The translations under genes were made by a program, and so were the position numbers. From IMG/VR virus record IMGVR_UViG_3300048625_000299, positions 124,001-188,000 of that record: DNA of 64,000 nucleotides, one strand, 5' to 3'. The first letter of the stretch is position 1. The number at the start of each line of letters is the position of its first letter. Shown one piece after another: positions 11,256 to 26,263 of this stretch. The notes beneath the pieces were generated by a model, which was given only the letters and a program-made list of their open reading frames with translations, had not been told where the DNA came from and searched no databases.

Positions 11256-11471
11256 ATGAACGAACGACTAAAAGATCTCGAAATCCAATGCTGGGAGCCT
11301 CGTCAATATGGCCCTCCATGGTTTAACGCAGAGAAGTTTGCACAGTTAATCATTCAGGAATGTATCGAGATCGTTGAGCCATGTAAGTGTGGCTGCAGGT
11401 GCGAACAAGAAGTCACCATCACAGACTCAATCATCGCTGATATCAAAGAACACTTTGGAGTGACGGAATGA
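11256..11471 (+). CDS. MNERI-family paralog
   Basis: MNERLKDL ... EKFAQLIIQEC ... IKEHFGV. Confidence 0.8.
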   Translation: MNERLKDLEIQCWEPRQYGPPWFNAEKFAQLIIQECIEIVEPCKCGCRCEQEVTITDSIIADIKEHFGVTE

Positions 11472-11679
11472 CACCAAATCCTAAATTGCGAGAGATGATT
11501 AAACGATTAGAAGACCTTGCGGACTATATGTTTGCGTGGACGATCATTGCAATACTGTATTTGACCATAGCATATGATTATGTGCAAGTTCATGTGCGGG
11601 AAGCTTACTATAAGATGTTCAGCATTCCATACTATAAAGGCCAAGGGAAGTTTGGTCCGTATATTACGAGGTTAAAAGA

Positions 11680-11892
11680 ATGAATGAGCGAATTGAACAA
11701 CTCGAAACCCAATGCTGGATTAGTCGTGATGGTTATCAGACATTCGATCGTCAAAAGTTCGCAGAACTAATCATCAACGAGTGTACCACAATGATTGAAA
11801 GTGATCAGTGGGCCCAAGACAACCAATCATGGTCTAGGGGCATGCGGTTTGCTGCTGGACTGATCAAAGAACGCTTCGGAGTTGAAGAATGA
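11680..11892 (+). CDS. MNERI-family paralog
   Basis: MNERIEQL ... QKFAELIINEC ... IKERFGVEE. Confidence 0.8.
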   Translation: MNERIEQLETQCWISRDGYQTFDRQKFAELIINECTTMIESDQWAQDNQSWSRGMRFAAGLIKERFGVEE

Positions 11893-12377
11893 AACTAGAC
11901 AAATTTATTGAGAACCTGACCAAATTGCAAGCTGCTGGACATGGCGACTTGGAAGTGTTCTATGTCCATGGTGCGTCAGGCGATTCTGGGTATCTCGGAC
12001 ATCCGTCAGTCAATGTGATTGATGGATCGGAGCTATGCGGTGCGCTGGTCGATTGGACAGTTGGCGAGAAGTATATCTCCGTCTATGCTGGAAACTAAGG
12101 TATGGATATTGAATCATTGAACAATCTATGGAATGAACTGGTCGCACACTATGGTGACGACTTGCCAGATCCAGAACAACAACCAAAGGAATTTAAGTAT
12201 TATGTCAAACTCTACACATACGTTAAGAACGCTGATCTTGGAGCGGATGCAGCACATGAACAAGCAGATCAATCTAGCTGATTATGCGGACCACGGTGAT
12301 CGCGATTTGCTCGACGATTTCGAGGAAATGTTGATCGAATTCCATAATTTGGAAGATGATGGACAGCGAGGATTCTA

Positions 12378-12593
12378 ATGAGCAAGCTAATTCGAAAACT
12401 TGCTAATGAAGCAAGAATAGAAGTAGGACAGCGAATTGGGTACAACGACCGTGACCGCGAAGAAGCGTTTGAAGTAGAGTTCGCCAAGCTGATTGTTCGG
12501 GAATGTGCTGGTATTTGTTTTAGTAACTGGCGTGATAATGGCGATTCTTATGGTCTTCTAATCAAAGAACATTTCGGGATTAGCGATGAATGA
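12378..12593 (+). CDS. MNERI-family paralog
   Basis: VEFAKLIVREC ... IKEHFGI. Confidence 0.8.
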   Translation: MSKLIRKLANEARIEVGQRIGYNDRDREEAFEVEFAKLIVRECAGICFSNWRDNGDSYGLLIKEHFGISDE

Positions 12594-12825
12594 TCAATTA
12601 GTCAGGCAACTTGCTGAACAGGCTGGGTTTAAGATTTTAACTGACGGCAGAATCGTCCCTACACTCGACCATAATGGCGAATGCGGTAGAGATTTGGAAA
12701 AGTTCGCGGAATTGATCATCAAGCAATGTGCTGAACTAACTCTTGACTACAAAAGCGAAACCTACTACAATGGCTGGTTAGATTATCGTGACGAGATTAA
12801 GAAACATTTCGGAGTTAAACAATGA
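12586..12825 (+). CDS. MNERI-family paralog
   Basis: MNDQLVRQLAEQAG ... EKFAELIIKQC ... IKKHFGV. Confidence 0.8.
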   Translation: MNDQLVRQLAEQAGFKILTDGRIVPTLDHNGECGRDLEKFAELIIKQCAELTLDYKSETYYNGWLDYRDEIKKHFGVKQ

Positions 12826-13003
12826 CACCTGAAATGATGGAGCGAATTCGTAAGGATTTCGAGAGGGAACCAGATAAGGAGACTCTTCACTGGGAAGCGT
12901 ATATTGCAGGATATATGGCTGGTGTAAGGAGATTCGCTGAAAGACCTGATAGGAAAGAGATCCACGCTAAGATGGGTTATTCCAGAGTAGGATTGGGGAA
13001 TGT

Positions 13004-13252
13004 ATGAACGAACGAATTGAAGAACTATTGGGTCAGGCCTACGACGAAGCAGTGCCAGAAACTTGGACTACACTTTCTTCTGAACAATTAGGAAGGATAT
13101 ATGAAAAGTTTGCCGAATTGATTGTTCAGGAATGTATCGGCTGTTGTGAGCAGGTGATTAGTGATCCTGTTCCCGAAAGTGTAGATACTTGGTTGAATGG
13201 TGGCGAACAATGTATCCAAGAGATTAAGAAACATTTCGGAGTTGAAGAATGA
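13004..13252 (+). CDS. MNERI-family paralog
   Basis: MNERIEEL ... EKFAELIVQEC ... IKKHFGVEE. Confidence 0.8.
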   Translation: MNERIEELLGQAYDEAVPETWTTLSSEQLGRIYEKFAELIVQECIGCCEQVISDPVPESVDTWLNGGEQCIQEIKKHFGVEE

Positions 13253-13393
13253 GCATGTATTGTATTCCGAATGCACCCAAACAAAATGGGGATTTGTGGG
13301 TGGTAGTGAAAGACAATGTGGTGACTGTTCTTAATCCAGCAGGCGAATATTGGAGAAATAAGACATTCACAATAGAGCAATTCAAGCGAGAGC

Positions 13394-13921
13394 TCAATAT
13401 CTCTTTAGCCAGTCCTTGATTTCAGGCGTACGTCCCCAATCCCATCCATTAGGCAATTCGGCCAGCCTCTTCTCATTACCAGTCTTAGGGCAATGACACC
13501 ATCTTCTACCAGCAACAGTAGATTTGCCCATTCTAGCTATACTAACAAGAGTCTTAGACATAGCAGACTTCCTAGAGCCCAATGCATTACTAGGCCTACC
13601 ACGCTTAGAGTCAGCCATCTTAGCCTTGGTCTCATCAGACATTACCTTACCAGTATTAGCGGCCTTGACAGCATTAACCATCCTCAACTTCTCTTCATCG
13701 GTGAAGTATTTCCAGCCCCATTTCTTCTTAACAACACACCCTTCAATAACAATAGTGCAATTGTATTGCTTCTTTAGGCGCTCAATAACAGCATCATAAT
13801 TGCCAGAATCTTTGATTGTAGAGACCTTTTCCCACTCTCGACCCCATTCGTTGTAAAAAAGTTTATCGCCCTTATCGTCGGTTCTAAGCGTTCCTTGCCG
13901 CATGTAAACAGATATAAGCAT
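13394..13921 (-). CDS. NUMOD3-motif DNA-binding protein (homing-endonuclease-type C-terminus, no recognisable nuclease domain)
   Basis: GKVMSDETKAKMADSKRG and GSRKSAMSKTLVSIARMGK repeats; RRWCH...ELPNGWDWGR tail. Confidence 0.65.
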   Translation of the reverse strand: MLISVYMRQGTLRTDDKGDKLFYNEWGREWEKVSTIKDSGNYDAVIERLKKQYNCTIVIEGCVVKKKWGWKYFTDEEKLRMVNAVKAANTGKVMSDETKAKMADSKRGRPSNALGSRKSAMSKTLVSIARMGKSTVAGRRWCHCPKTGNEKRLAELPNGWDWGRTPEIKDWLKRY

Positions 13922-14002
13922 ACGTATTTCCTATAATTAATTAATCCTAGTATATAGGAAATGGATAGTTTTTGTGAGAAAGAAGCGTATATGTTTACGT
14001 AT

Positions 14003-14130
14003 AGTATTATACCCCGTCTTAAACTAGTATGCACAATATTATAGCAAAGTATAGGGAATAGAGATATAGATGCACAGTATATACCCCCGTCTTAAACTTA
14101 TATGCACATAGTATAAGGAAATAGGGTAAC
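14003..14130. repeat. Degenerate tandem direct repeat, core CCCCGTCTTAAACT(A/T)(G/A)TATGCACA
   Basis: Copies at 14012-14034 and 14085-14108; related copy at 21426-21449. Confidence 0.8.
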
Positions 14131-14280: not shown

Positions 14281-14693
14281 AGTGCTACTGCTCACAGCCC
14301 AGAGTCACACTTTTGTTTCCAGTAATTGGGCAGCACAAAATGCCCACTAGCACTAAAGTGCCATGGCACAAAAGTGCCCAGGATTACAGCCAAAATAGCC
14401 ACTAGCTCAGTATAGCCCATGGCTAAAAAGTGCCAATAACGCGAAAGTGCTACTAGCTCAAAAGTGCTACTTTCATCTGAAAAGTGCCACTTTCGTGCTA
14501 CTCGGTCTATGGCTGAAAAGTGCTACTTGGATGGCGATTTCTGCCCATCAGCCAAAAGTGCCATGGCGATGGCTCAGAATAGCCAATAGCACTGAATAGC
14601 CACTTGGGCAGCTATTTTGTGTCCATAGCTAATCCTACCCACAAGAGGGCATGAAAGTGCTACTGTTAGTCAGAGTGGTACTTTTGTTTCCAG
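14281..14693. repeat. Non-coding iteron-like array of AAAGTGC(C/T)A motifs
   Basis: AAAGTGC at 14355, 14371, 14427, 14444, 14461, 14481, 14517, 14555, 14654; interleaved AATAGCC and CACTAGC motifs; no credible ORF. Confidence 0.85.
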
Positions 14694-14724
14694 AGTGAAT
14701 CTCCACATGATTTTGATGTTCGTG

Positions 14725-14753
14725 ATTATACTAGAACAAAGCTCACAAGTCAA
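14725..14753 (-). promoter_or_regulatory. Leftward sigma70-type promoter reading into the repeat array
   Basis: Minus strand TTGACT-17 bp-TATAAT. Confidence 0.75.
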
Positions 14754-14818
14754 CAGCTCACAGATAAGCTTACGATTTGGTTGGGTATTGTTGACATCTG
14801 TTTGGAATGGTGTACAAT

Positions 14819-14908
14819 GGGTAGTGGGAAGATCCTGAAGTTTGCGGAATCTTGGCCTGTCCGCTCTCCACGTCCATCCCCAGTCTGCCTGTTCGAACGC
14901 ATGCCCCT
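14819..14908. ncRNA. Candidate small RNA element E1 between convergent promoters
   Basis: Homologous to 16572-16656; no conserved ORF; rightward promoter 14791-14818 and leftward promoter 14909-14936. Confidence 0.4.
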
Positions 14909-15029
14909 ATTATACATGAAATTTTGGACTTGGCAACAGTTATTTGAATAAGCTTACACTCTGATTGGGTATCTGTTGTCTGTTTGTGACTTTGTGAGAT
15001 AATGAAGTCTTTCAATGAGGAGTGATGTT

Positions 15030-15341
15030 ATGTCTTTCAAGTACGGTGTGTCTTATAACTGTGAGATCGGTAATGATTGTGTGGGTGGTGCTGATGATGG
15101 ATTTTATTCATTAGACATGGTCGGCAATGATTTAGACAAGATTACGGCTTATATTAAGGAGCATGAGAGTGATTCTGATTTGGTGCTTGTTCTTGATGAT
15201 AATGGTGCTTTTATTGGGCAAGGTTGTTCCCAAGGTGGTGATGTTGTTGCCTACTTTGGCTACGATCACCGCGGTGATGGAGAAGTTTATCCCACAATCG
15301 TTGTGTTTGAAAATCCACAAGATTTGACAGTTATCGAATAA
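15030..15341 (+). CDS. Small acidic hypothetical protein
   Basis: Own promoter and GAGGAG SD. Confidence 0.7.
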   Translation: MSFKYGVSYNCEIGNDCVGGADDGFYSLDMVGNDLDKITAYIKEHESDSDLVLVLDDNGAFIGQGCSQGGDVVAYFGYDHRGDGEVYPTIVVFENPQDLTVIE

Positions 15342-15427
15342 CCTTACATTCTAGTTGGGTATTCGAAATAATCGTTGCTCAACTAGAATTTTGTGAGATA
15401 ATTAAATCTTTCAACAGGAGAATGTAA

Positions 15428-15604
15428 ATGAGAAAATATCTGTCGATTGAGTTGTATAGTGGAGAATGTGCTGAACTGTCATATGACGAGTTTATTGAGC
15501 AGATTGAGGGATGTGAGGAGATTACAGAAAATGCTCATTTCATTTCCTACAAATTTGAAGAGTATGTTGTGATTGAAGACAAAATTGCTGATTATGATGA
15601 ATAA
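15428..15604 (+). CDS. 58-aa highly acidic protein (not in ORF track)
   Basis: MRKYLSIELYSGECAELSYDEFIEQIEGCEEITENAHFISYKFEEYVVIEDKIADYDE; promoter plus CAGGAG SD. Confidence 0.7.
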   Translation: MRKYLSIELYSGECAELSYDEFIEQIEGCEEITENAHFISYKFEEYVVIEDKIADYDE

Positions 15605-15614
15605 GGAGAATGTT

Positions 15615-15845
15615 ATGTTAGATACAGTTGAGGTTGTTTCTGTAGAAGATGGTGGATTTTATCAAGACGCATATACAAGTGGCTCTACTGTAGATGTTGT
15701 GCTAAAACGTGGAAATGAGTTTGCAAAGTGCGAAGGAATTCTCATTTTTGAAGAACAGGATGATGAGTCTATGTTCGAATATTTTGAGGAGTGGAAACAA
15801 ATGGCTCAATCTGGTGAAGACGGATATAGCTATTGGATTGAGTAA
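15615..15845 (+). CDS. Small acidic hypothetical protein
   Basis: AAGGAG SD before ATG at 15615. Confidence 0.7.
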   Translation: MLDTVEVVSVEDGGFYQDAYTSGSTVDVVLKRGNEFAKCEGILIFEEQDDESMFEYFEEWKQMAQSGEDGYSYWIE

Positions 15846-15918
15846 GCTTACAGGGGAGTTGGTTATTCAGTTGACCAACTCTCAATTCTGTGCGACAATT
15901 ACATTTTAAGGAGCTGAA

Positions 15919-16179
15919 ATGAGAGTTAAATTCTGTTTTGTAGATTCTGGTACTGGTGAAAATGATGTTGTGACTTTATCGGTTAAAAATATGTCACAAT
16001 CTGAATTCGAACGTGTTTTCAATCAATACATCAATTATGGCGAAGAAGAGTCACCACTCCGTTTGGAACTAAAATCGCTAATTAATCACGGTCAAAATTG
16101 GGTAGCAACATTCACTCATCATTGTGCCTATTTCGGTCCAGTTTTGATTACCGGTATTGTTTACACGAATTTCAAATAA
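15919..16179 (+). CDS. Hypothetical protein
   Basis: Own promoter and AAGGAG SD. Confidence 0.7.
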   Translation: MRVKFCFVDSGTGENDVVTLSVKNMSQSEFERVFNQYINYGEEESPLRLELKSLINHGQNWVATFTHHCAYFGPVLITGIVYTNFK

Positions 16180-16267
16180 AAGTCAACAAGCTTACGTTCT
16201 GATTGGGTATCTGTTGCCCAATCAGAATTTTGTGAGATAATGAAGTCTTTCAACAGGAGAATGTAAA

Positions 16268-16414
16268 ATGAAAACAAACGAAGATGTCGTGCGTGCTGAG
16301 GATTGTTTCGGTAATTTGATGTCTGCTCTGTCAGATTTGGGATTAGACCATATTAATGATGTACTGCACGATTTGCGTGCACAGATGTTTGAAGAATTGG
16401 ATATCGAAGATTAA
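16268..16414 (+). CDS. 48-aa acidic protein (not in ORF track)
   Basis: MKTNEDVVRAEDCFGNLMSALSDLGLDHINDVLHDLRAQMFEELDIED; promoter plus SD; followed by terminator. Confidence 0.7.
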   Translation: MKTNEDVVRAEDCFGNLMSALSDLGLDHINDVLHDLRAQMFEELDIED

Positions 16415-16434
16415 GATTTCACAACAGGACGACA

Positions 16435-16456
16435 GGACACCGAAGTGTCCTTTTTT
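16435..16456 (+). terminator. Rho-independent terminator
   Basis: GGACAC-CGAA-GTGTCC-TTTTTT. Confidence 0.8.
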
Positions 16457-16571
16457 GTGTTTGGGAGGTACACTTTTGTTTCCAGGATAGTTTGGAACTA
16501 GATTAGCCAACTCTGTTCCAATATCTGAACACAGACTAGCCCGTTGTCGGAATGTAAAAATCGTGTATAAT

Positions 16572-16656
16572 AAAGGGTGGGAAGATCCCAACGTTAGCCC
16601 CAAGTATTGTTTAGCCGCTCTCGACGTCCACCCCAGTCCTGCTTTCGAATGCCTCA
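16572..16656. ncRNA. Candidate small RNA element E2 between convergent promoters
   Basis: Homologous to E1; rightward promoter 16544-16571 and leftward promoter 16657-16684. Confidence 0.4.
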
Positions 16657-16787
16657 ATTATACATCAGAATTTGATTTCGGCAACAGCGTTTGGAATGTC
16701 CTTCTGATTTGTCCTGGTATTTGTTGCCCATGTTGTCCGAATGTGAATTTGTGCTATACTGGGCGCATCACTTAACAGGAGTCTATT

Positions 16788-17129
16788 ATGATTGAAATCG
16801 CACCAGCGCTCGCAACCGTTCACTCGGGAAATTTGCAAAAAGTTTTGTATGACAAACACCTAATCGCCGCGCTCGCCCGGCAATTGGTCGCGTCTTCTGC
16901 GGAGGGACATATCGAAATGATTTCCGATTTCCCCGGCGAATATAACACATTCGCGGACGTCGATAAAGTGATGCAATATTCAAAAGACGCCGCTGCGGAT
17001 ATGTTTTCGGATTTTGTAACGGAATTCCGAGACGCCGTACACGCTGAAATCCAAAAAGTCAACATCGAAGTCCGTAAAGTGAATTTCACAAAAGAATTCG
17101 TCGATGATGTGTACGCCGTAATTACATAA
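16788..17129 (+). CDS. Hypothetical protein
   Basis: Own promoter and CAGGAG SD. Confidence 0.7.
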   Translation: MIEIAPALATVHSGNLQKVLYDKHLIAALARQLVASSAEGHIEMISDFPGEYNTFADVDKVMQYSKDAAADMFSDFVTEFRDAVHAEIQKVNIEVRKVNFTKEFVDDVYAVIT

Positions 17130-17228
17130 AAGTCAACAGTTACTGAATGTCCTTCAAAATCAGAGGGACATTCGTTGACTGAGATTTTAAATGTGTTACA
17201 ATGGGCACATCACAACAAGGAGTGCTAA

Positions 17229-17318
17229 ATGGAAGATTCTGAATTGGAAGAGCTGATCGCTCTGTGCGAAGAATTTGAATATCACAACAACCAGGAAAGT
17301 GAGTTTGACTATGCTTAA
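17229..17318 (+). CDS. 29-aa acidic microprotein (not in ORF track)
   Basis: MEDSELEELIALCEEFEYHNNQESEFDYA; promoter plus AAGGAG SD; overlaps next start at 17311. Confidence 0.55.
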   Translation: MEDSELEELIALCEEFEYHNNQESEFDYA

Positions 17319-17514
17319 GGTCGGAGAACGCGTACAAGTGGAGAATCTGGAAGGCGTGCACACAATCGTCGGCCACGGATTCTATGAGCAAGAGCATTTT
17401 GCAACAACTTCCCCAGCATACATCATTCGGATGGATAAGGGGCAGTGGACGGAAGACCACAATGCATTCATCAACGTGATCGTTGTCCACCCTGATAATG
17501 TGACGGAGGTTTGA
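17311..17514 (+). CDS. Small SH3-like hypothetical protein
   Basis: MLKVGERVQV...VVHPDNVTEV pattern. Confidence 0.6.
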   Translation: MLKVGERVQVENLEGVHTIVGHGFYEQEHFATTSPAYIIRMDKGQWTEDHNAFINVIVVHPDNVTEV

Positions 17515-17765
17515 GATGTTTGACAATCCGTACAAACACCCACATGGAACGATTTGCGTTGTGCGAGAGGTTCATGGAAAGCCAATTGCGCTCAGGGTAC
17601 TCCCTCAAGAGTATGGAACGAATTGGCCTGGTTGTTTCACCCTGCTTTTCTAAGAAAAGTCAACAGCCAAAATAATGAGCTTACAGAGCAGTTGGGTATT
17701 CGAAAAAGTTGTTGCCCAACTCTCAAATTGCACAGATAATTGAGTCATCACAAACAAAGGAGTAT

Positions 17766-17990
17766 ATGATGACAGTAGCAGAATTGATTGAGCAGTTGAA
17801 AGAGATGAACCAAGACGCTGAAGTGCATTTTGCACATGGCAGCGGAGATCATTGGCGCACAGTCGTGGCTCCCAAGGTCGACATGGTTTCTGAGGGGTAT
17901 GTCAAGTACAGCGAATACCACCGGATGGACAAGATCGATGACGGCGACGAAATCGATGAGTCTGCACGGGAAGTCGTAATCTTGGAATAA
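17766..17990 (+). CDS. Hypothetical protein (MTVAELIEQL family)
   Basis: Own promoter and AAGGAG SD. Confidence 0.7.
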   Translation: MMTVAELIEQLKEMNQDAEVHFAHGSGDHWRTVVAPKVDMVSEGYVKYSEYHRMDKIDDGDEIDESAREVVILE

Positions 17991-18080
17991 CAGTCTCTTT
18001 TAGTTGGGTATTCGGGTGTAACCGTTGACCGATTGCCCAACTGAGATGAGAATTGAGACATCCAAACAAAGGAGTGAAAC

Positions 18081-18398
18081 ATGATCAACATGGACGAATT
18101 CGAAGCGCTGCTAAACGAGAATAAGGAAATCACTGTTCTCGGCCGCAAGTTCGGGCAAGGGACTATCTTGCGCAAGTGCGACCCAGTTGCATTCCACGTC
18201 GAATATCACACCTACTGTGCTGCAGTAGAAGATGCGATTGAAGAAGAGTTGGAGGCTGATCGTTTTGATGAGGCATTGAAGCTGCTCAACGGCTATGTCG
18301 CTGACGGCGTCGAATTCCCTGATGCATTCTTCAAAGTGACATCTCGTTTTCCTACCATAGAACAGGAGGAATTGCAACTGGCATATGATTCACAATAA
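18081..18398 (+). CDS. Acidic hypothetical protein
   Basis: Own promoter and AAGGAG SD. Confidence 0.7.
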   Translation: MINMDEFEALLNENKEITVLGRKFGQGTILRKCDPVAFHVEYHTYCAAVEDAIEEELEADRFDEALKLLNGYVADGVEFPDAFFKVTSRFPTIEQEELQLAYDSQ

Positions 18399-18487
18399 TT
18401 TGACCAAACCTGTTGCCCAATAGGGCAATCTCACAGACAATTGAATTTCACAAGTTTTTAATAGTGTTCAACCTCAAGGAGAAAACC

Positions 18488-18871
18488 ATGAACGCAACTA
18501 CCAAAGCCACCATCGCCCAAGCAACCGTGAAAGCTGCTGCAGCACCGAAAGCCGTCAAAGCGAAAGCTGAGAAGGTCGCTCAAGTGATCGTCGCAAAAGC
18601 TGCTGAGACTGCAAAAGCGAAAGTCGCAGCGAAGCCAAAGGCCCCTGCTAAAGTGAAAGCAGAAGCCCCAGCAAAAGTTGAGAAGGTCGTCAAAGCTAAA
18701 CCTGCTGTGAAAGCTGAAGTGACGAAGAAGGTGTCTAAGAAGGCACAAGCTCTGGAAATCATCTTGAAGAATCCAGAAGCTGGTCGTCAGAAGATCCTTG
18801 CGATGTTCCAATCTAAGCTGAGCATGTCTGCAGCACAAGCAAACACGTATTACTACTTGGTCAAGGCCTAA
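18488..18871 (+). CDS. Lys/Ala-rich (histone H1-like) protein with C-terminal helical domain
   Basis: AKAKVAAKPKAPAKVKAE low-complexity region; C-terminus paralogous to 20884..21135. Confidence 0.7.
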   Translation: MNATTKATIAQATVKAAAAPKAVKAKAEKVAQVIVAKAAETAKAKVAAKPKAPAKVKAEAPAKVEKVVKAKPAVKAEVTKKVSKKAQALEIILKNPEAGRQKILAMFQSKLSMSAAQANTYYYLVKA

Positions 18872-18970
18872 AAGTCAACGGTTGCTGAATACCCTTCTTA
18901 ATTGAGGGGTATTTGTTGACTGAGACTCAATCTGTGCTATAATCGGCACATCGACAACTAGGAGAAACGC

Positions 18971-19123
18971 ATGTATAATCCACTCGATCTTTTCACAGCA
19001 CGTCAACTGATGCCCCAGCAAGTCAATGCCGCCATGGCTGCTGCAGAACTCAAAGTCCGTGCTCAGACAGTTCAATCTGTGATGCACGAAGCCAAATTGC
19101 CTGATCTTCCCTGCGAAGAATAA
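18971..19123 (+). CDS. 50-aa hypothetical protein (not in ORF track)
   Basis: Promoter 18915-18943 and TAGGAG SD. Confidence 0.55.
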   Translation: MYNPLDLFTARQLMPQQVNAAMAAAELKVRAQTVQSVMHEAKLPDLPCEE

Positions 19124-19208
19124 CCTTACAATCTGGTAAGGTACTCGTTGCCCAGTTGTGAGATTGGGCAGATAATTGAGTCATCATTCAACAACAGGAG
19201 AAACTGAA

Positions 19209-19643
19209 ATGATGCAAGCAGGCAAATACTATGTGGGCGACCTCTGCTACGTAATGACCGACGCAGAATGGGAACAGTTCTGTGATATCACGATCGATGG
19301 CATGAAGTGCAAAGACGGTGAGTTTGAACTGCCTGATGGCCGCAAGTTCGCAACCTATGGAACGTACTGGGGCGATGGCTGCTATTTCGATCAATATGGC
19401 AACGAATATACCGTAGACGCAGGTTTGATCGGCTGTATTCGTGTAGAAGACATTCGTGCACAGAAGTATGAGAACATCGAAGAGCTTGGCGCAATCCACG
19501 AATTCCAAACTGATTTCGTAACAGGTGGTGGACGTGCTGATTGTGGCCGCGGCGGCAAGTGGAACGGGACAATCCAATTTGGCCGCATTGCGATCGAGAC
19601 AAATCCCGTAGACGAAGATGATGAGGATGACAACGATTATTGA
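19209..19643 (+). CDS. Hypothetical protein (YYVGDLCYV / TVDAGLIG family)
   Basis: Own promoter and CAGGAG SD. Confidence 0.7.
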   Translation: MMQAGKYYVGDLCYVMTDAEWEQFCDITIDGMKCKDGEFELPDGRKFATYGTYWGDGCYFDQYGNEYTVDAGLIGCIRVEDIRAQKYENIEELGAIHEFQTDFVTGGGRADCGRGGKWNGTIQFGRIAIETNPVDEDDEDDNDY

Positions 19644-19727
19644 TTGAGCTTACGATCTGGTCAGGTATTGCTTGACCAGATTTCCAATCTCACAGATAAT
19701 TGACTCATCAACAACAGGAGAAGTGAA

Positions 19728-20090
19728 ATGTCAACACGCTGCATCATCGGTTATTCGGACGGTAAGATCCACGGCATGTACAGCCACTATGATGGCTACC
19801 CTGAACATGTCGGTAAGATCCTTGTACAACACCACAACAGTTTCGCTGCGATGGAAGAGATCCTCGAAGGTGGTCAAATCCGCAGCTTCGATCATGATGG
19901 CACAATCTGTCGCTTTGGACATGGTCCTATCGAAGGCGCTGAGACATTCGACAACGTCAAAGAAGTGTTGTCTAGTGGCTTTGATTATGTCTATCTGTGG
20001 TCAGATGATGGCTGTTGGAAATGTTGGGGCAAAGAACGTGGCGTAGTGAAGGAATTTGATATTCCTGGTAATCGTCCGTGGGAAGCATGA
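19728..20090 (+). CDS. Hypothetical early phage protein (STR..IG / YSHYDGYP family)
   Basis: Own promoter and SD; motif recognised from other phage early genes. Confidence 0.75.
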   Translation: MSTRCIIGYSDGKIHGMYSHYDGYPEHVGKILVQHHNSFAAMEEILEGGQIRSFDHDGTICRFGHGPIEGAETFDNVKEVLSSGFDYVYLWSDDGCWKCWGKERGVVKEFDIPGNRPWEA

Positions 20091-20503
20091 AAGATCTATT
20101 TGATTCCAACGCTGTCTATTTTATCGCATATTTTGTGGTGATGGCAGCGTTTGGACAATACATGATTCTGCGTAAGATTGCGGACTTCATTGACAACGTG
20201 AAGACTGCATTCACCAGAGCGAAGAAGGTAGTCAGGCAGAGACAACGAGCAACGGATGTCGAAGTGAAGGCAACTGAGCTTGTCGTGCAGCCTGATATCA
20301 AATTCAAAGTCAACCAGAAGGAATGTGAAAAGCAATTGAACTACATCAGGCAGCAAAGAGCTGTAGATGCAGGGATGCATGATTTGACATCGAAATTCCA
20401 TAGGAAGTCAACAGTCAAATAATGTCCTTCAAGTCTGTATGGATATCGGTTGTCGAGTTGGTCTTTTGGACAGATAATAGAGTCATCACAAACAAAGGAG
20501 TAT

Positions 20504-20728
20504 ATGATGAACTATCAAGAACACGCAGCAGTCGCAGTCACATCAGTCTACGAAGCAGTGACAGATGTCCAAGTCGCAAATACAGCTCATATGTACGCAG
20601 GGACTTTGTTTGTTGCATGCACGCCACGTGATGCAGCGAAGATTGAGACCACGCTGATTGAGAATCTCAACTGCGGAGTGATTGTCAGCCGAGTTGGTCC
20701 TGAGTTCGCATTCGATTTCACAGTATAA
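20504..20728 (+). CDS. Hypothetical protein
   Basis: Leader nearly identical to that at 17733-17770. Confidence 0.7.
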   Translation: MMNYQEHAAVAVTSVYEAVTDVQVANTAHMYAGTLFVACTPRDAAKIETTLIENLNCGVIVSRVGPEFAFDFTV

Positions 20729-20883
20729 TCATGGGCAAGAAGCACATCGAAAACCCAACACAACTGGACGAGGGCGCAAAGCGCCTCGCTCATTACAACG
20801 AATGGTTGCTTGATCCCAACCGACCATTCGGAACAATCTACCCCGGCTATCAAACATCCACCAAACCTACCAAAGGAAAGAAA

Positions 20884-21135
20884 ATGCCCTCAACAGTAAT
20901 CGCAGACATGACCAAGGTGTTGACCAAAGAGAAAAAGGTCGCTATCAAGCCAGCAAAGAAGGCTGCTCGTGTATCCGATGGTCCTCGTGCAGGCAGCAAG
21001 TCCGAACTTGCTGTGGAGATCTATAAGCGTCTGAAGGGCGACAAGGCATCTGTCATTGCAGCGTTCCAGTCTGAGCTCAGCATGTCTGTTGCAGGGGCAA
21101 CGACTTACTTCTACAACGCTAAGAAGGCTGCATGA
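20884..21135 (+). CDS. Basic protein, paralog of 18488..18871 (possibly starts at 20731)
   Basis: FQSELSMSVAGATTYFY vs FQSKLSMSAAQANTYYY. Confidence 0.7.
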   Translation: MPSTVIADMTKVLTKEKKVAIKPAKKAARVSDGPRAGSKSELAVEIYKRLKGDKASVIAAFQSELSMSVAGATTYFYNAKKAA

Positions 21136-21358
21136 TGGACATCGCCACCAGCAACTACATTGATCAGCAGTTGTTCCAGGTGGCGCCACTGCCCCTGCAG
21201 GACGAGCACTACCCGCACGGATTCGATCTCCAGATCAGGACAGAGGGACGCAAGACGAACTACCTGAAGGTGACACCTGCTCAGATGAAGAAGATCGAAG
21301 ACGTTCTAAGGGGCATCGGCTGTTGACCCAAGTACGCAGAGTGTGTATAGTCAGCTTT

Positions 21359-21426: not shown

Positions 21427-21762
21427 CCCCGTCAACTTAAACTAGTATGGAGTGCATTGTGCAACATAACCCAATCCCTCGCAGCCCATTGTTTGCAACG
21501 CCTGTTGACCAGCAGTCGCTCGACGCATACATTCAGCGACTGCCAAAGAGTGACCAAGCGATGGCCTACACGGTGTCAATGATGACATTCAATTTAGCAC
21601 ACAAGCTAGTCAATGATGAGATGGCACTGGAAACAAACTAGCCACTAGCTGACAGAGCAGCCCTCCCAAGGCCGGAAACAAAATAGCCCATGGGGGGTGT
21701 TTTGGAAACGCAAGTACTATACGTGCGGAGGGTATTAGAAAGTCCCGGGGAATCTCTATTCC

Positions 21763-22003
21763 AATCCGGTTTCTAATAGAGTCGTTTTCTAAAAATTTTT
21801 GTGCGGGAAACGTGCTGAAAAAGGTCTCCCCATATTTCTGGGGATATCATCATAGAAACATTCGATAGTTGCACCAAAAACTATCCGGATTCCAGATAAA
21901 GTTGATCTCAAAAATTTTTCCGCAGAAAATCTCAATTCAAATCCGGTTTCTAGGAAAGCGGATGTCTAAAAATTTTTTGCGGAAAAACGCGCTAAAAAGG
22001 GTC
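21763..22003. repeat. Two ~64-bp degenerate direct repeats with A5T5-6 tracts
   Basis: AATCCGGTTTCTA...CTAAAAATTTTT..GCGG..AAACG.GCT.AAAA.GGTC at 21763-21826 and 21940-22003; partial copy 21906-21929. Confidence 0.75.
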
Positions 22004-25713: not shown

Positions 25714-25911
25714 ACATATACCATGATCCTGACAAAATCAAATAGACGCAACGGCATGGCCGCTCGCAAAGACGGCCTCAGAAGCATGTGGTGCGGCCGT
25801 TGCGATCGTGATGTTGTTGGTGATTATGGTAAGTGTGGAGCTTGTGGTTACTCCCGCAAAAAGGAAAAAAAGAAAATTCCTAGGTTGGAGAAGCTCGAGG
25901 AATTGTTGTAA

Positions 25912-26245
25912 TCCCTTCAAAGCGAAGGACTTCTGGACGCGGGTTCGACTCCCGCCAGGTCCACCAAAAGGATTTTCAATGGATCAGTGGGATGATTATT
26001 TTCCTCCCTTAAATTTGTGGAACTACAGCCTACATTGGCAGTGGATCGATACTGATTCGGAAAATCCTTCTGATGGGCCTGCCATGGTTTCGACAGGGGT
26101 AGATAGTAGAGACGGCAACACGGTAGGCGATGACCGTAAATCAAGCGAAATCTATAAATGCAAACGATGAAGCATTTTTGATGGCTGCCTAATAGGCCCC
26201 ATCTGAGTTTTGCTGGTTGAACTTGGAAACAGAATCAACCAGCAC
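25912..26245 (+). ncRNA. ssrA: Circularly permuted (two-piece) tmRNA, tag (A)ANDEAFLMAA
   Basis: T-arm GCGGG-TTCGACT-CCCGC then CAGGTCC-A-CCA (25939-25966) lies upstream of the 5' strand GGGCCTG (26075); acceptor stem has G3:U70; tag ORF 26160-26192; 5' and 3' limits approximate. Confidence 0.9.
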
Positions 26246-26263
26246 TAATTTAAGGAGTAAAAA

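What the first reader, a model, noticed from the sequence alone, without database searches (positions are those of the whole stretch)
14748..21351. Array of back-to-back promoter cassettes, each carrying 1-3 small genes
Seen: ~16 rightward promoters with shared upstream AGCTTAC and TGGGTAT boxes, often with an inverted repeat across the -35 (e.g. TTCTGATTGGG/CCCAATCAGAA at 16198-16228). Many are preceded ~35-45 bp upstream by AAGTCAAC or GGCAAC, which is an opposite-facing -35, often just after the previous stop codon. Leaders are near-identical between units (17733-17770 vs 20471-20508; 14990-15014 vs 16228-16252). Established: promoter/stem-loop cassettes (PeSL) shuffle early genes in RB49-like T4-type phages. 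Inference: a recombinogenic plug-in array with its own regulator box and built-in antisense transcription. I do not recognise this divergent-promoter architecture from described systems.
Basis: partly seen in the sequence, partly recalled or inferred. Interest (0 to 1): 0.7.

Follow-up and report, generated by a model that had tools for sequence, protein, structure and literature searches.

The report
Phage early-gene promoter/hairpin cassette array
This is a run of 16 near-identical promoter-plus-hairpin linkers, each driving one to three tiny genes, in the variable early region of an uncultured freshwater T4-like phage; it is a new example of the known "PeSL" cassette system, and related phages show the cassettes being gained, lost and reordered at these linkers.

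Summary
Window 14748-21351 holds 16 rightward sigma70-type promoters (GTTGNC-N17-TAnAAT). Most share a conserved upstream block, a hairpin across the -35 and near-identical leaders, and together they drive 19 small ORFan genes. The genome is a 235-kb T4-like phage from IMG/VR.

The architecture matches the published PeSL (promoter-early stem-loop) cassettes of T4-type phages, which include a subclass with the stem-loop over the -35. Five metagenomic relatives carry the same linkers but differ in gene content and order. Breakpoints lie in the -10/leader, at the -35, at the AAGTCAAC box or at stop/start codons, and some linkers are hybrids.

The "built-in antisense transcription" idea fails for the cassettes. 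AAGTCAAC or GGCAAC is the complementary arm of an inverted repeat with the -35, and it has no usable -10 when it follows a gene. Complete leftward promoters exist at only three sites, all flanking a conserved non-coding core at the array's left edge and its second copy. That core occurs in at least 24 large-phage contigs, next to DnaA boxes or iterons, and looks like a replication origin or a small-RNA gene.

A dedicated regulator for the upstream block is possible but untested.

Verdict: new member, with local variations, of a known kind.

The parts
14748..21351 (+). Whole array: 16 promoter/hairpin linkers and 19 small genes (g1-g19), all rightward
14748..14818 (+). Linker A: AAGTCAAC 14747-14754, AGCTTAC/TTGGGTAT block 14768-14789, -35 14791-14796, -10 14813-14818. 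It fires into the non-coding core, not into a gene
14946..15029 (+). Linker B (-35 14976, -10 14998-15003, leader GAAGTCTTTCAA, SD GAGGAG) driving g1 15030-15341
   Evidence: g1 together with one linker is absent from relative L015, with the crossover in the shared -10/leader
15342..15427 (+). Linker C (hairpin arms 15349-15357/15380-15388 around -35 15375-15380; -10 15397-15402) driving g2 15428-15604 and g3 15615-15845
   Evidence: z -4.8
15846..15918 (+). Linker D (hairpin arms 15857-15864/15874-15881; -35 15871; -10 15894-15899) driving g4 15919-16179
   Evidence: z -3.7. g4 is only 64% nt identical to its L015 counterpart while its neighbours are 86-94%
16180..16267 (+). Linker E (AAGTCAAC 16180-16187; hairpin arms 16197-16207/16217-16227; -35 16214; -10 16236-16241) driving g5 16268-16414
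   Evidence: z -4.7
16434..16457 (+). The only canonical intrinsic terminator in the array (7-bp GC-rich stem followed by T6)
   Evidence: A metatranscriptome contig ends at 16445 and contig depth falls after it
16544..16684 (.). Second copy of the boundary module: rightward promoter F (-35 16544, -10 16566-16571), conserved core 16615-16655, and a leftward promoter (-35 16679-16684, -10 16657-16662)
16691..16787 (+). Linker G (GGCAAC 16680-16685 pairs with GTTGCC; -35 16733; -10 TATACT 16755-16760; leader GGGCGCATCAC) driving g6 16788-17129
   Evidence: L015 has a different linker in front of the 97%-identical g6
17130..17228 (+). Linker H: long nested hairpin (outer arms 17130-17137/17174-17180, inner arms 17145-17155/17163-17173), -35 17175, -10 17197-17202. 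Drives g7 17229-17319, g8 17311-17514 and g9 17516-17653
   Evidence: z -5.9
17654..17765 (+). Linker I (AAGTCAAC 17657-17664; hairpin arms 17690-17696/17715-17721; -35 17712; -10 17735-17740; leader TGAGTCATCA) driving g10 17766-17990
17991..18080 (+). Linker J (hairpin arms 18003-18009/18036-18042; -35 18025; -10 18048-18053) driving g11 18081-18398
   Evidence: A 10-nt indel between the upstream block and the -35 distinguishes it from L015 and from run X13
18399..18487 (+). Linker K (-35 18413-18418 is the 5' arm of a short hairpin; -10 18436-18441; no upstream block) driving g12 18488-18871, which has a Lys/Ala-rich N-terminal part and a C-terminal domain paralogous to that of g18
18872..18970 (+). 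Linker L: nested hairpin (outer arms 18872-18879/18915-18921, inner arms 18887-18897/18905-18914), -35 18916, -10 18938-18943. Drives g13 18971-19123
19124..19208 (+). Linker M (CCTTAC/GTAAGG hairpin 19123-19142; -35 19148; -10 19171-19176) driving g14 19209-19643
   Evidence: g14 matches phrog_20074
19644..19727 (+). Linker N (hairpin arms 19655-19663/19673-19681, which include the -35 at 19672; -10 19695-19700) driving g15 19728-20090 and g16 20087-20422
20423..20503 (+). Linker O (AAGTCAAC 20405-20412; -35 20450; -10 20473-20478; leader 96% identical to that of linker I) driving g17 20504-20728, g18 20731-21135 and g19 21132-21326
21323..21351 (+). Promoter Q (TTGACC-N17-TATAGT). Its -35 overlaps the stop codon of g19, and it is the right breakpoint of the g19 indel
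14725..14753 (-). Leftward promoter (TTGACT-N17-TATAAT) back to back with promoter A
   Evidence: Conserved in L015, L021 and L063
14861..14936 (-). Leftward promoter (-35 14931-14936, -10 14909-14914) and the conserved non-coding core it transcribes (14861-14907). The core has a 3-bp covarying stem around the invariant loop GUUCGAACAG, followed by a G-rich tract
14300..14700 (-). Iteron-like array lying downstream of the leftward promoters. All six genomic copies of AAAAGTGC are at 14370-14554, and the array is flanked by ACTTTTGTTTCCAG at 14309 and 14680
   Evidence: It is positionally equivalent to the DnaA-box clusters of related elements

Best explanation
The array is the early hyperplastic region of an uncultured T4-like phage. 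It is built from PeSL-type composite linkers. Each linker runs from the stop codon of the preceding gene to the start codon of the next.

A linker contains, in order:
- often the box AAGTCAAC(A/G)G;
- a conserved block of about 30 nt (AATAAsCTTAC-N7-TTGGGTATT);
- a sigma70-type promoter (GTTGNC-N17-TAnAAT, often with an extended-10 TG);
- one of three conserved leaders, ending in a GGAG Shine-Dalgarno.

Nested inverted repeats make a stem-loop that encloses or includes the -35.

Shown here: the motifs, their excess over chance, the cassette-specific (covarying) complementarity of the hairpin arms, stronger folding of the sense strand, and cassette gain, loss, replacement and reordering among relatives with junctions inside or at the edges of the linkers.

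Inferred: host RNA polymerase fires every cassette early in infection. In read-through RNA the hairpin forms at the 3' end of the upstream message and attenuates, processes or stabilises it. The repeated linkers are patches of homology for the phage recombination machinery, so a gene can be plugged in or removed together with its own promoter, without disturbing its neighbours.
For: T4-like identity: gp6, gp7 and gp8 baseplate domains; nearest isolates are Caulobacter phage Cr30 and Sinorhizobium phage phiM12, at about 40% amino-acid identity.

Promoter excess and clustering.

Hairpins:
- Folding z-score -2.55 against -0.45 and -0.18 for controls.
- Complementarity of a cassette's own arms against arms of other cassettes: permutation p < 1/5000.
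- The sense strand folds more stably than its reverse complement (-22.3 vs -17.6 kcal/mol; 30 of 39 cassettes; p = 7e-6) and has more G-U pairs. After controlling for composition, z is -2.06 against -1.18.

The genes are small ORFans; only a few match PHROG families, all of unknown function.

Differences from L015 (about 88% nt identity): six in 6.6 kb.
- g1 plus one linker is lost or gained, with the crossover in the shared -10/leader.
- g5, the terminator and the second core copy are replaced by an unrelated gene; an E-type promoter is joined to a G-type leader.
- A complete 212-nt cassette is inserted exactly from stop codon to stop codon.
- The g9 indel ends at the AAGTCAAC box and the g19 indel ends at a -35.
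- Identity per segment ranges from 64% to 100%.

Gene order differs in L021 and L064, and L063 lacks g1-g5.

A metatranscriptome of a relative (X13) shows further arrangements.

A 100%-identical metatranscriptome (X2) covers the array genes at uneven contig depth (6-57, against 122 for baseplate genes). It has contigs that run through linkers K-O and one that ends at the terminator.

The published PeSL definition fits, including stem-loops that overlap the -35 (PMC2839356; PMC4122927).
Against: - No promoter, terminator or recombination activity was measured. The RNA data are unstranded contigs, and DNA carry-over cannot be excluded.
- Indel junctions at gene boundaries are expected under selection whatever the mechanism. 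Only the hybrid linkers and the crossover inside a shared leader point specifically to linker-linker recombination.
- Two indels (the extra gene between g7 and g8, and g9) use microhomology at start/stop overlaps rather than linkers.
- Few hairpins are followed by a U-tract, so most are not classical terminators.
- In relative L064 the linkers keep the upstream block and the promoter but have weak hairpins (z -0.6).
- The region upstream of the -35 is not AT-rich as it is in described PeSLs.
Confidence: 0.72

Rival explanations
1. The upstream block AATAAsCTTAC-N7-TTGGGTATT is the binding site of a dedicated phage or host factor. That factor would switch all cassettes of the array on or off together, which is the reader's "own regulator box".
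For: - The block is conserved over 30 cassettes of three phages whose shared array proteins are only 40-65% identical; information peaks are 1.1-1.8 bits.
- It is absent from the 25 other sigma70-like sites of the genome.
- It lies either 0-2 or 9-11 nt from the -35, a difference of one helical turn. The orthologous linker J switches class by a 10-nt indel.
- It persists in L064, where the hairpins are weak.
- The conserved array gene g18 has a confident three-helix C-terminal domain.
Against: - No regulator has been identified. The g18 model has no significant structural match and no Pfam hit.
- Parts of the block are hairpin arms that covary (GAATGTCC/GGACATTC, GAATAACC/GGTTATTC, TAATACCC/GGGTATTA).
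- The 9-11 nt spacer insert is A-rich, like an ordinary UP element.
- The protein-DNA complex prediction was not run by the tool.
Confidence: 0.25
2. Each cassette carries a divergent antisense promoter (AAGTCAAC or GGCAAC read as an opposite-facing -35), so the array makes antisense RNA against the upstream gene.
For: The reverse complement of AAGTCAAC is GTTGACTT, identical to the phage's own -35 consensus. Three such sites have a perfect TATAAT at 16-17 nt on the minus strand.
Against: Those three sites all flank the non-coding boundary core. None of about 14 boxes that follow a coding gene, in the window, L015 and L021, has an acceptable -10. The box lies a fixed 42-43 nt (or 32, or 50-53 nt) from the rightward -35 and pairs with it in the long hairpins of linkers H and L.
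Confidence: 0.07
3. The cassettes move by site-specific recombination at the GTCAAC/GTTGAC inverted repeats, in the manner of integron attC sites, rather than by homologous recombination.
For: Cassettes are bounded by imperfect inverted repeats with conserved outer arms. Two indels end exactly at AAGTCAAC or GTTGAC. Folding is stronger on one strand.
Against: The junctions are heterogeneous: -10/leader, -35, AAGTCAAC, stop codon, start codon. No integrase was seen; the only neighbouring DNA enzyme-like gene carries a NUMOD3 homing-endonuclease-type motif. Every cassette has its own promoter, unlike integron cassettes.
Confidence: 0.05
4. The linkers are only leftovers of tandem duplication of an ordinary early promoter. 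They have no structural or recombinational role.
For: Leaders and promoters are near-identical within a genome and are homogenised differently in each phage. L064 uses CTTATAAT-AGAGTCAT where the window uses CAGATAAT-TGAGTCAT.
Against: Invariant boxes alternate with variable segments whose two arms covary, which simple duplication does not produce. The architecture is kept across distant relatives. Hybrid linkers show exchange between them.
Confidence: 0.1

Closest known systems
PeSL (promoter-early stem-loop) cassettes of T4-type phages RB49/phi1, T4/PST and KVP40/nt-1 (Arbiol et al. 2010, PMC2839356; Comeau et al. 2014, PMC4122927)
   Same: - Linkers of about 80-110 nt that start at the upstream stop codon and end with the SD and ATG.
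- A near-consensus sigma70 promoter.
- A stem-loop that can overlap the -35.
- Clustering among small ORFans in a hyperplastic region of a T4-like genome.
- Indels, replacements and displacements between relatives at or next to the motifs, with crossovers between the -10 and the SD.
   Different: - The region upstream of the -35 is a conserved G/C-containing 30-nt block, not simply AT-rich.
- The stem-loops are nested: the outer arm is the complement of the -35 and sits right after the stop codon.
- Stems are not polyG/polyC.
- The host and phage lineage are different (a freshwater phage, nearest to phages of alphaproteobacteria at about 40% identity).
- Neither activity nor mini-circles have been shown.
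T4 early promoters with extended upstream conservation, and T4 middle (MotA-box) promoters
   Same: Early promoters conserved far beyond the two hexamers. GCTTAC followed about 13 nt later by TAT superficially recalls a MotA box plus a -10.
   Different: No MotA or AsiA homologue was detected (the control genomes were silent too, so this is weak evidence). The -10-like part is G-rich and lacks the invariant T. The block lies upstream of a complete -35/-10 pair.
Integron gene cassettes (attC)
   Same: Small mobile gene units bounded by imperfect inverted repeats that fold on one strand.
   Different: Each cassette here has its own promoter. No integrase was found. The junctions are not at a single core site.
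Transcript-primed or iteron/DnaA-box origins (T4 oriF/oriG R-loop origins, T4 oriE iterons, P1 oriR). This comparison applies to the boundary module only and rests on general knowledge, not on a test made here
   Same: A promoter reading into a conserved, partly G-rich element, next to an array of DnaA boxes or iterons.
   Different: No sequence similarity was tested. No initiator gene was identified. GC skew is uninformative. In some relatives the transcript ends at a terminator about 130 nt downstream, as a small-RNA gene would.

Membership tests
PeSL cassette | Sigma70-like -35/-10 promoter in the intergenic linker | tested here: met
   16 sites. The strict pattern gives 13 hits in 6.6 kb against about 1 per strand per genome in shuffles
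PeSL cassette | Stable stem-loop within, overlapping or next to the promoter | tested here: met
   Mean z -2.55 over 39 cassettes. Arm complementarity is cassette-specific (p < 1/5000). Overlap with the -35 is a described subclass
PeSL cassette | Begins at the stop codon of the upstream gene and ends with the Shine-Dalgarno and start codon of the next | tested here: met
   TAA or TGA is part of the first box in most linkers. A GGAG or AGGA SD is present in 13 of 15
PeSL cassette | AT-rich tract upstream of the -35 | tested here: not met
   It is replaced by the conserved block AATAAsCTTAC-N7-TTGGGTATT. An A-rich insert of 9-11 nt is present in only about a quarter of cassettes
PeSL cassette | Concentrated in a hyperplastic region of a T4-like genome among small genes of unknown function | tested here: met
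   T4-like baseplate genes. 19 ORFs of 29-144 aa without a Pfam match. Elsewhere in the genome promoter-like sites are several kb apart
PeSL cassette | Insertions, deletions and replacements between close relatives at or next to the motifs | tested here: met
   Six differences from L015 in 6.6 kb, against about five discontinuities in the next 20 kb. Reordering in L021 and L064
PeSL cassette | Measured promoter and terminator activity | not testable with these tools
   Only unstranded metatranscriptome contigs were available. Array genes are covered unevenly, and one contig ends at the canonical terminator
PeSL cassette | Mini-circles formed by recombination between flanking linkers | tested here: inconclusive
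   The 'goes back' joint 16415->15343 in X13 and the 17741->20480 joint in X4 could be variant gene orders, circle or deletion products, or k=31 assembly chimeras
Divergent (antisense) promoter pair at every cassette | A complete -35 and -10 on the minus strand upstream of each rightward promoter | tested here: not met
   Complete at only 3 sites in the window, all next to the non-coding core. None of about 14 gene-adjacent boxes qualifies
Integron-like cassette array | An adjacent tyrosine recombinase and recombination at one core site of the inverted repeat | tested here: not met
   The junctions are heterogeneous. The neighbouring minus-strand gene has only a NUMOD3 motif. The full genome was not screened for integrases
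T4 middle-mode (MotA) promoter | A MotA box at -30 replacing the -35, with MotA and AsiA encoded by the phage | tested here: not met
   No PF09114 or PF09010 match in the genome, although the controls were silent as well. A normal -35 is present downstream of the box

The most novel reading that the evidence does not exclude
The 30-nt upstream block may be a true operator shared by all cassettes of this phage clade, read by an unidentified phage or host factor on one face of the helix (0-2 or 9-11 nt from the -35). The array would then be a plug-in regulon: any gene dropped between two linkers would automatically acquire promoter, regulator site, insulator hairpin and ribosome-binding site. 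The array is also anchored to a widely conserved origin-like or small-RNA module that supplies the only genuine divergent promoters.
Probability: 0.2. Interest if true: 0.65.

Novelty: new member of a known kind. Interest (0 to 1): 0.4.

Why it matters
This extends the PeSL mechanism of modular gene shuffling from a few cultured coliphages, Yersinia phages and vibriophages to an uncultured freshwater lineage of large T4-like phages. It does so with population-level evidence from metagenomes and metatranscriptomes that cassettes are exchanged at the linkers.

The unusually well-defined linker grammar (stop codon, inverted -35, conserved block, promoter, leader) gives a clean substrate for testing how such linkers insulate, express and recombine early "ORFan" genes. 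Early genes of this kind are where anti-defence and host-takeover functions tend to reside.

The boundary element found along the way may mark a conserved replication origin or small-RNA gene of many large phages.

Tried and rejected
- Nucleotide search of the array against 50,697 GenBank phage records: no match.
- Rfam at gathering threshold on the window, and at E <= 1 on the boundary region: only the tmRNA.
- Reading the upstream boxes as a MotA-type middle promoter: no MotA or AsiA, and the -10-like part is G-rich.
- RegB endoribonuclease as a reason for the uniform GGAG SDs: no homologue (the controls were silent).
- A conserved peptide in the non-coding core: the start codon is not conserved and the indels are not multiples of three.
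- A consensus RNA fold of the whole core on either strand: none. Only a 3-bp covarying stem around an invariant loop was found.
- GC skew as an origin marker: no inflection.
- Complex prediction of g18 with linker DNA: the tool did not fold it, so there is no evidence either way.
- g18 structure: a confident three-helix C-terminal domain, but no significant PDB match. The ESM Atlas gave only weak leads (DUF3489, AT-hook).
- The motif scan AGCTTAC-N7-TTGGGTAT in IMG/VR gave mostly chance hits. Only loci that also carried the leader motif were relatives.

Full report
**Context.** The window is bases 124001-188000 of a 234,864-bp IMG/VR virus record with direct terminal repeats. Large ORFs downstream of the finding carry T4 gp6, gp7-like and gp8 baseplate domains. 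The gp6 homologue is closest, at about 40% identity, to Caulobacter phage Cr30 and to Sinorhizobium phages phiM12 and phiN3. No GenBank phage matches the array at the nucleotide level. The object is therefore an uncultured, distant T4-like phage. Public runs that hold it are freshwater metagenomes.

- Reading the sequence and scanning it gives 16 rightward sigma70-like promoters between 14791 and 21351.
- A strict pattern derived from them occurs 29 times on the + strand and 4 times on the - strand of the genome, against about one per strand in shuffles. Thirteen of the + hits lie in this 6.6 kb; the rest are several kb apart.
- Nine linkers share a 30-nt family containing AGCTTAC and TTGGGTAT. 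The exact composite occurs four times in the genome, all here.
- Three leader classes run from the -10 to the GGAG Shine-Dalgarno.
- The promoters drive 19 ORFs of 29-144 aa. None has a Pfam match, and only a few match PHROG families, all of unknown function.

**Hairpins.**
- The 60 nt upstream of the -35 plus the spacer fold with a mean z-score of -2.55 in 39 cassettes of the window and two relatives. Other promoter-like sites of the genome give -0.45 and random segments -0.18.
- The arms differ from cassette to cassette but stay complementary. Each upstream region pairs better with its own -35/spacer than with those of other cassettes (mean -15.8 vs -12.5 kcal/mol; none of 5000 permutations was as low).
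- There are two geometries. In linkers C, D, E, I, J and N, the variable N7 plus TTGGG pairs with the bases after the -35. In H and L, a long nested hairpin has AAGTCAAC pairing with GTTGACT (the -35), and GAATnnCC pairing with GGnnATTC.
- The sense strand folds better than its complement (30 of 39; p = 7e-6) and has twice as many G-U pairs. This holds after controlling for composition (z -2.06 vs -1.18). It favours a role in sense RNA or in one DNA strand.
- Only a few hairpins are followed by a U-tract. The only canonical terminator is at 16434-16451.

**What AAGTCAAC and GGCAAC are.**
- They lie a nearly fixed 42-43 nt (sometimes 32 or 50-53 nt) upstream of the rightward -35 and are its reverse complement.
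- As minus-strand -35 elements they would need a -10 inside the 3' end of the preceding gene. None of about 14 such boxes in three phages has one.
- Complete leftward promoters, each with a perfect TATAAT, occur only at 14753->14725, 14936->14909 and 16684->16657. These are three of the four minus-strand hits in the whole genome.
- All three flank a non-coding element that exists in two copies (14861-14907 and 16615-16655).
- The "divergent promoter" picture is therefore true only at the left boundary of the array and at its internal duplicate, not at each cassette.

**Comparison with relatives.** Motif scans and a search with g18 retrieved five relatives.
- Against L015 (about 88% identity) there are six differences in 6.6 kb:
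  1. g1 plus one linker is absent, with the crossover inside the -10/leader segment shared by linkers B and C.
  2. g5, the terminator and the second core copy are replaced by an unrelated gene, and an E-type promoter is joined to a G-type leader.
  3. An extra small gene sits between g7 and g8, flanked by the start/stop overlap ATGCKTAA.
  4. g9 is absent; the junction is at the AAGTCAAC box.
  5. A complete 212-nt cassette is inserted exactly from stop codon to stop codon after g17.
  6. g19 is absent; the junction is at the -35 of promoter Q.
- Identity per segment ranges from 64% (g4) to 97-100% (g6, linker K), which is a mosaic.
- The next 20 kb shows about five discontinuities.
- L063 lacks g1-g5, which is the result expected from an exchange between the two core copies. 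It also carries an extra minus-strand gene.
- In L021 the order is g11, g12-like, g17, g8, g14, g15, g18. In L064 it is g2, g15, g6, g11, g13, g18, g17, g19, g16.
- Contigs of metatranscriptome X13, from a relative at about 92% identity, show g5 followed by linker C and two contexts for one gene end. A DNA contig of X4 joins linker I to linker O through their 31-nt identical leader, but this could be an assembly chimera.
- Gene content and order are therefore not fixed, and several junctions lie inside linkers.
- Caveat: junctions at gene boundaries are what selection would leave in any case. The specific evidence for linker-linker exchange is the hybrid linkers and the crossover inside a shared leader.

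**Expression.** A metatranscriptome-labelled run with 100% identical contigs (X2) covers the array genes at contig depths of 6 to 57. It shows nothing over the two non-coding cores, one contig that runs through linkers K to O, and one that ends in the terminator. The baseplate region sits in a single contig at depth 122. The uneven depth argues for RNA. However, contigs carry no strand and DNA carry-over cannot be excluded, so transcription start sites and antisense RNA remain untested.

**The upstream block.**
- Over 30 cassettes of the window, L021 and L064, the consensus is AGAATAACCTTAC-AGTTTGG-TTGGGTATTGG, with information peaks at AATA and GGTAT.
- It is absent from the 25 other promoter-like sites of the genome, so it is not needed for early promoter function as such.
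- It sits 0-2 or 9-11 nt from the -35. The orthologous linker J changes class by a 10-nt indel between the window and L015 or X13.
- Part of it is hairpin arm: the GAATAnCC/GGnTATTC pairs covary. Yet it persists in L064, where hairpins are weak.
- Binding by RNA polymerase alpha subunits or by a dedicated factor is possible. Nothing available here could test it. No MotA, AsiA or RegB homologue was found.
- The conserved array protein g18 has a confident three-helix C-terminal domain but no significant structural relative. The protein-DNA prediction was not run by the tool.

**Comparison with what is known.** PeSLs were defined in RB49/phi1 and later found in T4/PST and KVP40/nt-1.
- They start at the upstream stop codon and contain an AT-rich tract, a strong sigma70 promoter and a stem-loop, and they end with the SD and ATG.
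- The stem-loop may lie upstream of the promoter, between the hexamers, downstream, or overlapping the -35 or the -10.
- They cluster in hyperplastic regions and mark indels between close relatives. Crossovers have been mapped between the -10 and the SD, and mini-circles have been detected (PMC2839356; PMC4122927).
- The present array meets every sequence-level criterion except the AT-rich tract. The activity and mini-circle criteria could not be tested.
- I therefore file it as a new member of that kind, with lineage-specific variations: a conserved G/C-containing block, nested inverted repeats that use the -35 itself, and three leader classes.

**By-product: the boundary module.**
- The core transcribed by the leftward promoters is conserved far beyond this clade. 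A 21-base pattern finds 25 IMG/VR loci in contigs of up to 364 kb, where about 0.1 is expected by chance.
- In RNA sense it reads CAUGC-GUUCGAACAG-GCA-NN-CUGGGGAUGGACG..., with a 3-bp stem that covaries around the invariant loop (covariation 0.42 vs 0.13 in shuffles). There is no Rfam match.
- Downstream of it, in the direction of the transcript, lie arrays of short repeats:
  - 3-6 DnaA boxes in six loci, including L021, with none upstream and a background of 0.14 per 700 nt;
  - AAAAGTGC-type iterons in the window, L015 and L063 (all six genomic copies are within 185 nt);
  - another 10-mer repeated 11 times in L203.
- In L095 and L092 a terminator-like hairpin follows about 130 nt downstream.
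- This looks like a replication origin with a primer or activator transcript, or like a small-RNA gene next to an origin. It explains why genuine back-to-back promoters exist at the edge of the array.

**Verdict.** The system is a PeSL array in a new phage lineage.

Noticed in passing
window 14861-14936 and 16615-16684 (minus strand); L072, L092, L095, L104, L125, L187-L204: A leftward sigma70-type promoter reads into a non-coding core of about 45 nt that is conserved in at least 24 distinct large-phage contigs. The core has a 3-bp covarying stem around the invariant loop GUUCGAACAG and then a G-rich tract. It has no Rfam family. The window has two copies.
   Followed up: partly
window 14300-14700; L021:1-520 region; L072, L191, L193, L197, L204 downstream of the core: Arrays of short repeats lie just downstream of that core. 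In the window these are AAAAGTGC-type iterons (all 6 genomic copies at 14370-14554), flanked by ACTTTTGTTTCCAG. In six related loci they are clusters of 3-6 DnaA boxes. This is a candidate replication origin.
   Followed up: partly
window 25852-26260 (+): The phage encodes a permuted (two-piece) tmRNA of the betaproteobacterial type, with tag peptide ANDEAFLMAA. This is a possible clue to the host.
   Followed up: no
window 13394-13921 (-): The only minus-strand gene next to the array is a 175-aa protein with a NUMOD3 motif, the DNA-binding module typical of homing endonucleases. It is preceded by repeated GTGCATA..GTTTAAGACGGGGTATA units at 13990-14110.
   Followed up: no
window 18488-18871 and 20731-21135: g12 and g18 are paralogues in their C-terminal 45-residue three-helix domain. 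g12 has a Lys/Ala-rich, histone-H1-like N-terminal part. The g18 family has more than 120 metagenomic homologues and sits at or near the right end of the small-gene array in the three relatives fetched through it (L063, L064, L066).
   Followed up: partly
window 11468-13419 (+): The adjacent block of small rightward genes has overlapping start/stop codons and no linkers. Several products are paralogues that share the motif KFAELI..EC and end in HFGV(E/K). This is a second, linker-free style of ORFan region.
   Followed up: no
window 21751-22003: Two 76-nt direct repeats (76% identical, 177 nt apart) lie just downstream of the array, each with terminator-like hairpins on the minus strand.
   Followed up: no
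genome position about 27,100 (outside the window): A consensus early promoter is directly followed by sequence that looks like the 5' end of a tRNA gene, which suggests a promoter-driven tRNA cluster.
   Followed up: no
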